Of a DNA stretch of 64,000 nucleotides, positions 1,136-58,728 are shown piece by piece. Under the pieces are notes generated by a model, which saw only the letters and a program-made list of their open reading frames with translations, was not told the origin of the DNA and ran no database searches. The position numbers were made by a program, and so were the translations under genes. How positions within the stretch are numbered: position 1 is the first letter of the stretch; every line of letters starts with the position of its first letter. This DNA comes from Octopus vulgaris (taxonomy: Eukaryota), in NCBI GenBank assembly GCA_951406725.2, contig OX597831.1, positions 26,598,001 to 26,662,000 of the forward strand, read 5' to 3'.

Positions 1136-1206
<71 letters not shown>

Positions 1207-17135: not shown

Positions 17136-17251
17136 GAGTAAGCACATGAATGCAAAGCAAGGTGGAAAAAATAGTACTCAAATACCAAAGGTAGAGTAAT
17201 ATGCTTTTATTAGAGCAGAAAAATCTTCACAAATTGTTACTCAGAGTTTCA
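17136..17251 (-). mobile_element. Truncated copy of the 44245-44467 hammerhead element
   Basis: GAGTAA.CACAT.AATG..AAACAAGGTGGAAAAAA.AGTACTCAAATACCA..GGTAGAGTAATATGC shared; retains only GAAAC-TCTGA-GTA of the ribozyme on minus strand. Confidence 0.75.
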
Positions 17252-17311
17252 TGGTACATATATATATGTGTGTGTGTATATGTGTGTATGTATATATATA
17301 TATATATATAT

Positions 17312-44197: not shown

Positions 44198-44990
<793 letters not shown>

Positions 44991-44994
44991 TCAT

Positions 44995-45225
44995 CGGCAG
45001 TGAACTGGCAGAAACGTTAGCATGCCGGGCGAAATCCTTAGCGTTATTTTGTCTGTCATTACGTTCTGAGTTCAAATTCCGCCGAGATCGAGTTTGCCTT
45101 TCATCCTTTCGGGGTCGATAAATAAAGTACCAGTTTCGCACTGGGGTTGATGTAATCGACTTAATCCCTTTGTCTGTCCTTGTTTGTCCTCTCTATGTTT
45201 AACCCCTTGTGGGTAGTAGAGAAAT
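44995..45225 (+). mobile_element. SINE family B, monomer
   Basis: Head plus one unit. Confidence 0.85.
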
Positions 45226-45245
45226 ATATATATATATATATATAT

Positions 45246-45438
45246 GTAGGTCCCGGGTTGAGTCGAGGTTAACCACAGTAAATAAGGTACTCAATACATA
45301 GCAGAGTAAATTAATTTATTTTATAGAAGGAGCTTCTACAGGACTAGAACTGTTTCATTCAAAAGAAATCATCAGGAGCTTCCTGATGATTTCTTTTGAA
45401 TGAAACAGTTCTAGTCCTGTAGAAGCTCCTTCTATAAA

Positions 45439-45444
<6 letters not shown>
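45246..45444. mobile_element. Second palindromic hammerhead-bearing element in (TA)n, different family
   Basis: Perfect 64-bp inverted arms 45314-45377 / 45381-45444; AATAAA and tail on the minus arm. Confidence 0.75.
45374..45430 (+). ncRNA. Type I hammerhead ribozyme (predicted)
   Basis: Stem I AGGAGCTTC/GAAGCTCCT (9 bp); CTGATGA 45383-45389; stem II TTC-TTTT-GAA; GAAA 45402-45405; stem III ACAG-TTCTAGTC-CTGT; predicted cut after GTA at 45421. Confidence 0.8.
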
Positions 45445-45477
<33 letters not shown>

Positions 45478-45481
<4 letters not shown>

Positions 45482-45766
45482 TAGTTATTGCCAAGCTAAC
45501 ATGGCAGTCTAGAAAAATAGGACGAATGCTGCCATTGATTAGCTCCAAGAGGCCATCGCCTCTAGCTAGCTATGTGACACACGAACCTGTATCCATTATA
45601 AACTTCAAACAGAGGAGGTCAGCTGCTTCTCCTGTTCGAAGGTTATAGTGGACACAAGTTCGTGTATCACATAGCTAGCTAGAGGTCATGGCCTCTTGAA
45701 GCTAATCAACAGCAGCATTCATCCTATTTTTTGGGACTGCCATGTTAGCTTGGCGATAACTATTAA
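45478..45766. mobile_element. Foldback MITE (almost entirely palindromic)
   Basis: TTAATAGTTATTGCCAAGCTAACATGGCAGTC...GACTGCCATGTTAGCTTGGCGATAACTATTAA; arms ~140 bp, TA flanks. Confidence 0.8.
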
Positions 45767-58208: not shown

Positions 58209-58728
58209 CAGAGGTTCTCAAACTTTTGGGGCCATCGCTCCCCTCATGACTACATAATACCCCCAGTGCCCCCACTCCTGTTTTTATGTAGCATGGAATT
58301 TTGTCAGTGAACAGGTCGCGGTTTCAAAGTGACAAAAATATTTTGGCAAATTAAATTTAAATGTTGAAGTGAATCTAACGGTTTTTGTGTGTTTCTTAAA
58401 TGGCTTATAAACACCTTCCATGCTGCAATTGTTTTCGTTCCAGCACACGATCTCTGATCAGGTCACTTGCTATGCAAGTACATCTCCATAATATATAAAT
58501 TATATTTTACTAATTTATATATACTATGAATCATTTGATATTTAATATATTATATAATTTGTATACAGCACTATAATAATAATATAATAAATTCATAGCA
58601 TCCCCCCAATCCACTACCTTCCTCCCAACACCTCCTTTTAAATCTACACCGCCACTTAGGCACCAGTGCCCACTTGGGCCGTCTCACCGACTACTGGTGG
58701 GTGGTAATGCCAACTTTGAGAACCTATG
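58209..58728. mobile_element. hAT-type (Charlie-like) MITE
   Basis: TIRs CAGAGGTTCTCAAACTT / AACTTTGAGAACCTATG; 8-bp TSD CCTTAACC / CTTTAACC. Confidence 0.85.

What the first reader, a model, noticed from the sequence alone, without database searches (positions are those of the whole stretch)
45246..45444. Second, unrelated hammerhead palindrome 0.8 kb away, with a visible fold-back origin
Seen: 64-bp perfect arms with a 3-nt spacer. The plus arm has a 9-bp perfect stem I, a 4-bp stem III with CTAG in the loop, and a GUA site. The 5' strand of stem I overlaps the palindrome centre AGGA-GCT-TCCT, a natural micro-hairpin. Inference: the inversion arose by snap-back priming at this hairpin just upstream of the ribozyme core. 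In both palindromes the inversion point lies within ~10 nt upstream of CTGATGA, suggesting a reproducible mechanism. Caveat: U-U at 10.1/11.1.
Basis: partly seen in the sequence, partly recalled or inferred. Interest (0 to 1): 0.78.

Follow-up and report, generated by a model that had tools for sequence, protein, structure and literature searches.

The report
Palindromic hammerhead-bearing mobile element copy
The 199-bp "hammerhead palindrome" is real, but it is one copy of a young, dispersed mobile-element family that lands in (TA)n microsatellites and looks like a miniature Penelope-like retroelement inserted as a head-to-head dimer, not an inversion that arose at this spot.

Summary

It is not local and not an artefact. 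At least 40 copies, 98-100% identical, sit on about 25 chromosome-size contigs, with the same junction and the same ends, and 29 of 30 inspected lie between (TA)n tracts.

It is related to the palindrome 0.8 kb away. Both have the plan (TA)n | one-sided tail | arm | spacer | arm' | (TA)n, and the tails are homologous. Two more families share the plan. One of them also has monomers with a constant tail end and a variable other end, which is the signature of a retroelement.

Hammerhead-type motifs are about 90-fold enriched here over permuted-core decoys. Four families share the unpaired 10.1/11.1.

Hammerhead, (TA)n target, inverted 5'-truncated partner copy and one-sided tail together match published Penelope-like element (PLE) insertions. 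In a transcript the -106 kcal/mol hairpin would outcompete the -16 kcal/mol ribozyme fold.

Verdict: new member of a known kind, moderate interest.

The parts
45224..45245 (.). (AT)n microsatellite flanking the element on the left, taken to be target sequence
   Evidence: 29 of 30 copies have a (TA) run of at least 8 nt on this side, median 37 nt.
45246..45313 (-). 68-nt one-sided 'tail' (head). On the - strand it is the 3' end of the inferred sense RNA and ends ...AACCCCGACUCAACCCGGGACCUAC. It has no counterpart beyond the right arm.
   Evidence: Present and constant in all 30 inspected copies. Homologous to the tail of the neighbouring palindrome. In the L030 family this is the constant end and the other end varies.
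45314..45377 (-). Left arm. This is the tail-bearing copy of the HHR region; its HHR reads on the - strand, with a weak helix I.
   Evidence: Seven of 16 arm variants among the 30 copies fall in its last 5 nt, consensus positions 128-132.
45378..45380 (.). 3-nt spacer GCT at the palindrome centre. It supplies 3 of the 9 pairs of + strand helix I.
   Evidence: The spacer is GCT in 29 of the 30 head-first-oriented copies; L020 carries an extra G beside it (GGCT).
45381..45444 (+). Right arm. This is the tail-less copy of the HHR region and ends ...CTATAAAATAAAT, next to (AT)n.
45374..45430 (+). Type I hammerhead-like motif. Helix I 45374-82 / 45422-30; core CUGAUGA 45383-89; helix II 45390-401 (U.U plus 3 bp); GAAA 45402-05; helix III 45405-20 (loop contains CUAG); predicted cut 45421|45422.
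   Evidence: Not recognised by Rfam.
45445..45478 (.). (AT)n microsatellite flanking the element on the right
44247..44472 (.). Tail 44247-44312; arms 44313-44388 / 44397-44472; 8-nt spacer AGCAAAAA; HHR core at 44401-44407; (TA)n on both sides.
17136..17254 (+). Non-palindromic relative of the sister element, 83-89% identical. It has the tail plus a partial arm ending at the GAAAC box, followed by (TA)n.
58291..58486 (-). Monomeric copy (tail plus one arm) of the L030-type family. That family also occurs as a 165-nt-arm palindrome in locus L030.

Best explanation
45246-45444 is one insertion of a young, non-autonomous retroelement family whose structure matches a miniature Penelope-like element (PLE) insertion.

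The unit is two inverted copies of the same ~130-nt RNA region: a PLE-type hammerhead followed by a 3' region.

Inferred mechanism:
1. A PLE RT/GIY-YIG protein supplied in trans cuts both strands of an AT-rich (TA)n target.
2. It primes reverse transcription on both strands.
3. One cDNA starts at a distal start site and therefore keeps the 68-nt tail. The other starts at a proximal site 68 nt further in and has no tail.
4. [quoted passage not shown]
5. They are joined head-to-head by a template jump or microhomology (AGGA/TCCT). That junction is the palindrome centre.

Either this is repeated at every insertion, or the dimer, once formed, is transcribed and copied as a unit.

What is shown: a dispersed family, the identical junction in all copies, (TA)n flanks, the one-sided tail, relatedness to the neighbour, and monomers and 5'-truncated copies in a sister family.

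What is inferred: the PLE enzyme, two-strand priming, and the junction chemistry.

The hammerhead is a passenger inherited from the PLE terminal region. In a transcript of the whole palindrome the 64-bp hairpin should prevent it from folding.
For: 1. Dispersed family. 40 scored places at 98-100% identity on about 25 contigs, out of 653 first-look candidates. 30 copies inspected show 0.55% divergence and 9 are identical to the consensus. Their flanks are not colinear.

2. Target. 29 of 30 copies have (TA) runs of at least 8 nt on both sides.

3. Architecture. The plan (TA)n | tail | arm | spacer | arm' | (TA)n recurs in pal1, pal2, L030 and L014. L011 has the same plan with a 42-nt AC-rich tail.

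4. Retroelement signature. Four L030-family copies share the exact tail end, while their other ends differ: 119 nt, 195 nt, 197 nt or more, and a palindrome. A pal1 relative has the tail and a partial arm only.

5. HHR motifs are real and of the PLE type. There are 8 hits against 0.087 for decoys. Helix III is short and palindromic: CUCAGAG, CUAG, GUAUAC, CAUAUG, CAGCUG, AUAU. This matches PMC4209133, which also reports paired min-HHRs on opposite strands 100-700 bp apart.

6. Literature.
- PLE insertions often carry an inverted 5'-truncated copy and a 30-40-bp tail at one end only. The Hydra and Naiad clades insert into (TA)n, and Hydra always has HHRs (PMC8557442).
- A purified PLE protein cuts and extends both strands of AT-rich DNA. 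It starts reverse transcription at two internal sites that define the tail, 85-92 nt downstream of the HHR cut (PMC11167929). Here the cut site lies 23 nt from the proximal end and 91 nt from the distal end.

7. Junction. 7 of 16 arm variants, including all 4 indels, lie in the 5 nt just left of the spacer and none at the mirror positions. One copy (L029) has the same change in both arms.
Against: - No RT/GIY-YIG-coding partner with a matching terminus was found.
- The tail is 68 nt, against the 30-40 bp described for PLEs.
- There is no tandem pLTR arrangement here.
- Helix II is short and 10.1/11.1 is unpaired, whereas published PLE min-HHRs have 6-8 bp and a conserved G10.1-C11.1.
- Rfam models do not score the motif.
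- All 30 copies have exactly one tail, and 29 of 30 keep the GCT spacer in the same orientation. That fits inheritance of a ready-made dimer at least as well as re-formation at each insertion.
- Only the 30 best-scoring copies were seen.
Confidence: 0.62

Rival explanations
1. A SINE-like element mobilised by a microsatellite-specific non-LTR retrotransposon, for example an R4/Dong-type LINE. The inverted half would arise by a twin-priming-like reaction. The HHR would be an independent acquisition.
For: Constant 3' end with variable 5' end, and microsatellite flanks. Dong-R4 LINEs are reported as recently active in Octopus vulgaris (PMC13282606), if this genome is an octopus. That identity is my unverified guess.
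Against: Twin priming inverts adjacent, non-overlapping RNA segments. It does not duplicate the same segment into a perfect palindrome. To my knowledge, HHRs, a one-sided tail and inverted duplicate copies are PLE signatures and are not described for LINE/SINE pairs (PMC8557442, PMC11167929).
Confidence: 0.15
2. A fold-back MITE moved by a cut-and-paste DNA transposase that targets TA (Tc1/mariner-like).
For: Long hairpin, small size and flanking TA. A symmetric inverted-repeat element with TIR-like ends lies next door at 45479-45765.
Against: The two termini are not inverted repeats: GTAGGTCCCGGG... against ...ATAAAATAAAT. One arm is 68 nt longer in every copy. Sister families have monomers and one-sided truncations with a constant end. 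The element carries an HHR motif.
Confidence: 0.08
3. One reading: a local fold-back inversion produced at this locus by snap-back priming at the AGGA-GCT-TCCT micro-hairpin.
For: The centre is a micro-hairpin, and the junction lies just upstream of the core in both neighbouring palindromes.
Against: At least 40 copies on other chromosomes have the same junction and ends. Self-priming of a single strand cannot leave a 68-nt tail on one arm only.
Confidence: 0.03
4. An assembly fold-back artefact.
For: Perfect palindromes are a known artefact of some library preparations.
Against: The same 199-bp structure, with private point differences, occurs at 40 or more independent sites with different flanks.
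Confidence: 0.01
5. A host hairpin-RNA gene family (miRNA or endo-siRNA precursor) that is under selection as such.
For: Perfect 64-bp hairpin at -106 kcal/mol. Weak, sub-threshold Rfam miRNA-precursor matches.
Against: All the miRNA matches are below gathering score and are generic hairpin matches on both strands. The copy number, the (TA)n flanks and the truncated relatives indicate a transposable element. Small-RNA production would be a consequence, not the identity.
Confidence: 0.05

Closest known systems
Penelope-like elements (PLEs), especially the (TA)n-targeting Hydra and Naiad clades, and their typical insertion structure (Craig et al. 2021, PMC8557442; Frangieh et al. 2024, PMC11167929)
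   Same: HHR motif near the end of the unit. AT-rich or (TA)n target. An inverted 5'-truncated copy abutting the main copy. An extension ('tail') at one end only, explained by two reverse-transcription start sites. Heavy 5' truncation. The distance from the HHR cut to the distal end (91 nt) is close to the 85-92 nt reported for the anole PLE.
   Different: No ORF and no tandem pLTR. The whole unit is only 199 bp. The tail is 68 nt rather than 30-40 bp. The inverted dimer with an invariant junction is the form seen in all inspected copies. The autonomous partner is unidentified.
PLE minimal hammerheads (Cervera & de la Pena 2014, PMC4209133)
   Same: Type I topology. Canonical CUGAUGA/GAAA core. 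Short helix III with a palindromic sequence, so it could form a dimer. Many divergent families per genome. Pairs found on opposite strands.
   Different: Helix II is only 2-3 bp, with unpaired 10.1/11.1, instead of 6-8 bp with G10.1-C11.1 and a bulge after A9. pal2 has a longer, monomer-capable helix III (4 bp plus an 8-nt loop) and a 9-bp helix I.
Animal non-LTR retrozymes (Cervera & de la Pena 2020, PMC7229834; Li et al. 2026 preprint, 10.64898/2026.07.22.740005)
   Same: Short, non-coding, HHR-bearing repeats proposed to be non-autonomous derivatives of PLE pLTRs.
   Different: Retrozymes are head-to-tail tandem arrays that yield circular RNAs. Here the two copies are head-to-head, so unit-length excision by two same-strand ribozymes is not possible.
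L1 twin priming / 5' inversion
   Same: Two priming events on opposite target strands give an inverted 5' part.
   Different: Twin priming does not duplicate the same segment, so it gives no palindrome. It involves no ribozyme and no tail.
Fold-back MITEs with a TA target (Stowaway / Tc1-mariner type)
   Same: Size, hairpin potential and TA-rich insertion sites.
   Different: MITEs need matching terminal inverted repeats. This element's ends do not match, and its sister families show one-sided truncation.

Membership tests
Hammerhead ribozyme (type I) | Conserved core C3-U4-G5-A6-N7-G8-A9 ... G12-A13-A14, and cleavage after N-U-H | tested here: met
   CUGAUGA 45383-89, GAAA 45402-05, GUA 45419-21.
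Hammerhead ribozyme (type I) | Three helices around the core, with helix I open | tested here: met
   Helix I 9 bp, helix II 3 bp, helix III 4 bp. The helices differ in sequence but are kept in 8 local families. Enrichment over decoy cores is 8 against 0.087.
Hammerhead ribozyme (type I) | G10.1-C11.1 closing pair of helix II | tested here: not met
   U.U here. A.A, A.A and C.A in three sister families.
Hammerhead ribozyme (type I) | Scores above the curated Rfam threshold (RF00163, RF00008 and related models) | tested here: not met
   No hit at gathering score. The best is Hammerhead_3 at 17.7 bits against a 48.5 cut-off, in another register.
Hammerhead ribozyme (type I) | Self-cleavage activity | not testable with these tools
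   Needs an in vitro transcription and cleavage assay. The competing hairpin is -106 kcal/mol against -16 kcal/mol for the ribozyme fold.
Penelope-like element (non-autonomous derivative) | HHR motif in the terminal region | tested here: met
Penelope-like element (non-autonomous derivative) | Insertion into AT-rich or (TA)n DNA | tested here: met
   29 of 30 copies are flanked by (TA)n on both sides.
Penelope-like element (non-autonomous derivative) | Inverted 5'-truncated copy adjacent to the main copy, with a 'tail' extension at one end only | tested here: met
   Seen in pal1, pal2, L030, L014 and L011. Tail lengths of 68 nt (pal2), 42 nt (L011) and about 51 nt (L030) against the published 30-40 bp.
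Penelope-like element (non-autonomous derivative) | A cognate autonomous element encoding a telomerase-like RT plus a GIY-YIG endonuclease, with a homologous terminus | not tested
No such ORF lies in the window or the loci.
Penelope-like element (non-autonomous derivative) | Tandem or partial-tandem arrangement (pLTR) | tested here: not met
   No head-to-tail copies at any of the 30 loci.
TIR MITE | Matching terminal inverted repeats at both ends | tested here: not met
   The ends GTAGGTCCC... and ...AAAATAAAT are unrelated. One arm is 68 nt longer in every copy.
TIR MITE | Fixed-length target-site duplication | tested here: inconclusive
   The flanks are (TA)n, so a TA duplication can be neither seen nor excluded.
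Non-LTR retrozyme | Head-to-tail tandem repeats, each with an HHR, giving circular RNA | tested here: not met
   The copies are single inverted dimers. Circular RNA is not testable here.

The most novel reading that the evidence does not exclude
The palindrome is not inherited. It is rebuilt at every insertion from a ~135-nt monomer RNA. Two cDNAs are primed on opposite target strands at two different start sites and fused by a template jump at the RNA's 5' end. These copies would then be in vivo footprints of the two-strand priming so far seen only in vitro for one PLE. They would also point to a fixed division of labour, because the tail is always on exactly one side. The perfect hairpins would seed the genome with hundreds of potential dsRNA sources.
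Probability: 0.25. Interest if true: 0.6.

Novelty: new member of a known kind. Interest (0 to 1): 0.4.

Why it matters
Few PLE insertion intermediates are understood. A young, tiny, high-copy family may preserve both reverse-transcription start sites and the head-to-head junction at base resolution. That would make it a convenient natural read-out of the mechanism.

For ribozyme work, the locus adds a recurrent HHR variant with unpaired 10.1/11.1 and a very short helix II. A sister family has a core that reads G3...C8 instead of C3...G8.

For genome annotation, these elements would otherwise be called MITEs, miRNA-like hairpins or assembly fold-backs.

Tried and rejected
- **Rfam.** Scans at gathering score and at E up to 10, on the window and on five loci, call no hammerhead. 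They return only generic sub-threshold miRNA-hairpin matches.
- **Global MAFFT of the two palindromes.** The alignment was uninformative. Segment-wise pairwise alignment showed the homology.
- **MAFFT of eight HHR motifs.** It could not align the 3' halves, so no covariance model was built. A descriptor with shuffle and decoy-core controls was used instead.
- **Search for coding capacity.** The ten longest window ORFs have no TE domains in Pfam. The loci hold only LINE-RT-like and mariner-like ORF fragments (judged by eye from their sequences, no domain search run) and no PLE-like ORF. The 290 nt downstream of the L026 HHR has no long ORF.
- **Helitron reading.** Rejected: no 5' TC or 3' CTRR ends.
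- **Pol III SINE reading.** Rejected: there is a B-box-like GGTTGAGTC in the tail, but no A box and it is at the wrong end.
- **Organism identity.** Not established. A literature string search for the neighbouring SINE found nothing. ARAGORN found no tRNA.
- **Papers.** The supplementary HHR lists of PMC8557442 and the paper PMC5785218 are not held.

Full report
**1. What is there**

The window is a stretch (C18:26598001-26662000) of a 2.8-Gb eukaryotic assembly in 227 contigs. It is rich in (TA)n microsatellites and SINE-like repeats. My guess from memory is an octopus, but I could not verify that.

- The perfect 64-nt arms are 45314-45377 and 45381-45444, with spacer GCT.
- On the + strand there is a type I hammerhead (HHR) layout. 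Helix I is AGGAGCUUC/GAAGCUCCU (9 bp), and its 5' strand spans the palindrome centre. It is followed by CUGAUGA and a weak helix II (U.U plus 3 bp). Then come GAAA, a 4-bp helix III with a CUAG-containing loop, and a GUA site. The predicted cut is at 45421|45422.
- The hairpin is overwhelmingly non-random (z = -21).
- The mirrored motif on the - strand has only two contiguous helix-I pairs, because the spacer is not symmetric.

**2. It is a mobile-element copy, not a local inversion or an artefact**

A search of the window's own genome with 45300-45445 returned 40 scored places, out of 653 first-look candidates. They are 98-100% identical and spread over about 25 chromosome-size contigs.

In the 30 copies I could read:
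- The unit is the same 199 bp, with the same ends and the same centre.
- There are 33 differences in 30 x 199 nt (0.55%), and nine copies equal the consensus.
- Flanks beyond the unit are unrelated apart from other dispersed repeats. 29 of 30 copies have (TA) runs of at least 8 nt on both sides, with medians of 37 and 32 nt.

The unit is asymmetric. A 68-nt 'tail' (GTAGGTCCCGGG...GAGTAAATTA) precedes the left arm, and nothing corresponds to it after the right arm.

**3. The neighbouring palindrome is a relative**

The element at 44247-44472 has the same plan: (TA)n, tail, 76-nt arms, 8-nt spacer, (TA)n. Its tail aligns with that of pal2 (GTACTCAA(A)TAC..AGAGTAA..TTTATTTTA). Its arms carry CUGAUGA...GAAAC at the same place. 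So 'unrelated' is wrong.

**4. The plan is general, and it points to a retroelement**

The 3-kb loci fetched around other pal2 copies happened to contain more elements with the same plan.
- L030 has 165-nt arms and a 51-nt tail.
- L014 has 129-nt arms.
- L011 is (TA)n | tail-less inverted copy | 38 nt plus a single HHR | direct copy | 42-nt AC-rich tail | (TA)n.

The L030 family also exists as monomers. L020 has the tail plus one arm, with (TA)n on both sides. The window copy 58291-58486 has the tail plus one arm. L019 is cut off after 119 nt. All four L030-family copies begin at exactly the same tail nucleotide, while the other end varies. A pal1 relative at 17136-17254 likewise has the tail and only part of one arm.

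A constant end with a variable opposite end is the classical signature of target-primed reverse transcription. [quoted passage not shown] For pal2 the sense strand of the tail-bearing copy is therefore the window's - strand.

**5. The hammerhead motifs are real as a class**

A relaxed descriptor was run on the window plus the loci. It requires CUGANGA or GUGANCA, helix II of at least 2 bp with an optional bulge or 10.1/11.1 mismatch, GAAA, at least one self-complementary pair in the helix III inner segment (the stretch between A15.1 and U16.1), a U-H site, and helix I of at least 4 bp.
- It found pal1, pal2 and six further motifs in other elements.
- Shuffled 64-kb windows gave 0.09 hits.
- With the pal2 family counted once and the CUGANGA core only, there are 8 distinct hits. 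150 decoy descriptors with permuted core boxes, run on the same real sequences, gave a mean of 0.087 and never more than one hit.

Across families the core is constant, while the helices differ in sequence and stay paired.
- The helix III inner segment (between A15.1 and U16.1) is short and palindromic: CUCAGAG, CAG..CUAG..CUG, GUAUAC, CAUAUG, CAGCUG, AUAU.
- Four families share an unpaired 10.1/11.1 followed by 2-3 bp.

Short palindromic helices III are the published hallmark of PLE hammerheads, which are thought to act as dimers and cleave poorly in vitro (PMC4209133; PMC6765202). Unlike those, pal1 and pal2 lack G10.1-C11.1 and a long helix II. Rfam models do not score them. Catalytic competence is therefore open.

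**6. Match to Penelope-like elements**

Craig et al. (PMC8557442) describe PLE insertions as follows:
- heavily 5'-truncated
- often with an inverted 5'-truncated copy abutting the unit
- with a 30-40-bp 'tail' at one end only

The Hydra clade (HHRs always present) and the Naiads insert into (TA)n.

Frangieh et al. (PMC11167929) studied a purified PLE protein.
- It cuts and extends both strands of AT-rich DNA.
- It starts reverse transcription at two internal sites in an AC-rich stem-loop. The tail is the sequence between those sites.
- The sites lie 85-92 nt downstream of the HHR cut.
- HHR cleavage is not needed for insertion in vitro.

In pal2 the predicted cut lies 23 nt from the tail-less end and 91 nt from the tail end. 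The tail end is an AC-rich hairpin (AACCCCGACUCAACCCGGGACCUAC).

Four features coincide here: HHR, (TA)n target, inverted partner copy and one-sided tail. That is why I file the element as a non-autonomous PLE-type insertion. Its two arms would be two cDNAs primed on opposite strands from the two start sites and joined head-to-head at the template's 5' end.

The defining test is a cognate RT/GIY-YIG element with the same terminus. No such ORF lies in the sequence I hold.

**7. How the centre formed**

If the tail-bearing cDNA ended at ...CATCAGGA, its end could pair AGGA with the TCCT end of the tail-less cDNA and be extended on it. That extension gives exactly the observed ...CATCAGGA-GCTTCCTGATG.... 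In that case the source RNA began with the full 9-nt helix-I strand.

Plain self-priming of one strand cannot leave a tail on one side only. In L030, comparison with the monomers shows that the 8-nt spacer is colinear with the tail-bearing copy. So which partner overshoots differs between families. In L011 the inverted copy stops 3' of the HHR. The breakpoint is therefore not fixed relative to the core across families.

It stays open whether pal2's junction is rebuilt at every insertion or inherited from a dimeric master.
- For rebuilding: 7 of 16 arm variants, including all four indels, lie in the five bases just left of the spacer, and none lie at the mirror positions. One copy (L029) has the same substitution in both arms.
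- For inheritance: all 30 copies have exactly one tail, and 29 of 30 keep the GCT spacer in the same orientation.

**8. Function**

A transcript through the whole unit folds into a 64-bp perfect hairpin at -106 kcal/mol, against -16 kcal/mol for the ribozyme fold of one arm. The right arm would zip onto the left as it is made. I therefore expect the ribozyme to be silent in the dimer and to be a passenger from the PLE terminus. A likelier consequence of such copies is dsRNA. That last point is inference.

**9. Verdict**

It is wrong on 'unrelated' and on a local origin.

The element is a new member of a known kind. It is of moderate interest as a compact natural record of PLE integration and as a source of unusual hammerhead variants.

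Noticed in passing
L030:1334-1370 (+) and mirror 1299-1263 (-); related copies window:58291-58486 (-) and L020:2832-3017: The L030-family motif fits the published PLE min-HHR layout: 7-bp helix I, a bulged G after position 9, a 5-bp helix II closed by G10.1-C11.1, GAAA, and a palindromic AAUAUU helix III. Its core, however, reads GUGAACA, which is G3...C8 instead of C3...G8. In the laboratory that double swap is known to partly rescue activity (PMC11167929). It may be a natural core covariation.
   Followed up: partly
window:45479-45765: A third, older inverted-repeat element lies directly after pal2's right (TA)n tract. It has 163-nt arms at 83% identity and a 19-nt spacer. Its ends are symmetric and TIR-like (TTAATAGTTATTGCC...GGCGATAACTATTAA). 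It has no HHR core and no one-sided tail, so it looks like an ordinary fold-back MITE.
   Followed up: partly
L014:1161-1438; L022:1822-1984; L023:1296-1398: Further long palindromes next to (TA)n tracts, with arms of 129, 74 and 40 nt and no canonical HHR core. L014 has the same one-sided tail plan. (TA)n tracts in this genome seem to be a general landing site for hairpin-shaped elements.
   Followed up: partly
L023:846-807 (-), L023:~1161-1200 (+), L009:595-630 (+), L026:1286-1253 (-), L023:3070-3107 (+): More HHR-type motifs in other short elements. Several have perfectly palindromic 6-nt helix III segments (CAGCUG, CAUAUG) and a long helix II. One L023 copy has a decayed core (GTGATGA, with GAAA lost). 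At L026 the element's 3' end faces an inverted partial copy across a short (TA)n tract.
   Followed up: partly
pal2 consensus positions 128-132 (window 45373-45377), seen in L014, L018, L020, L021, L023, L025, L028: There is a mutation hotspot confined to the tail-side edge of the palindrome centre. It holds 4 indels and 3 substitutions among 30 copies, and the mirror positions hold none. The CUGAUGA box of the right arm is intact in all 30 copies.
   Followed up: yes
window:40104-40222 (+): Rfam calls a tRNA (43.3 bits) with a 38-nt insertion in the anticodon region, probably an intron-containing eukaryotic tRNA gene. ARAGORN, run in bacterial mode, reported nothing.
   Followed up: no
window:44590-44960 and 44965-45220: Two SINE-like repeats lie between the two palindromes. 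The first starts with a tRNA-like GGCGCAGGAGTGGCTGTGTGGTAAG...GGTTCCGGGTTCAGTCCC. Similar sequences recur in the flanks of several loci.
   Followed up: no
L010:3-1115 (+); L005:609-1205 (+); window:52609-53031 (+): ORF fragments that look, by eye from their sequences (no domain search was run on them), like a non-LTR LINE reverse transcriptase (FRPGRSC...DFAKAFD) and a mariner-like transposase. None looks PLE-like.
   Followed up: no
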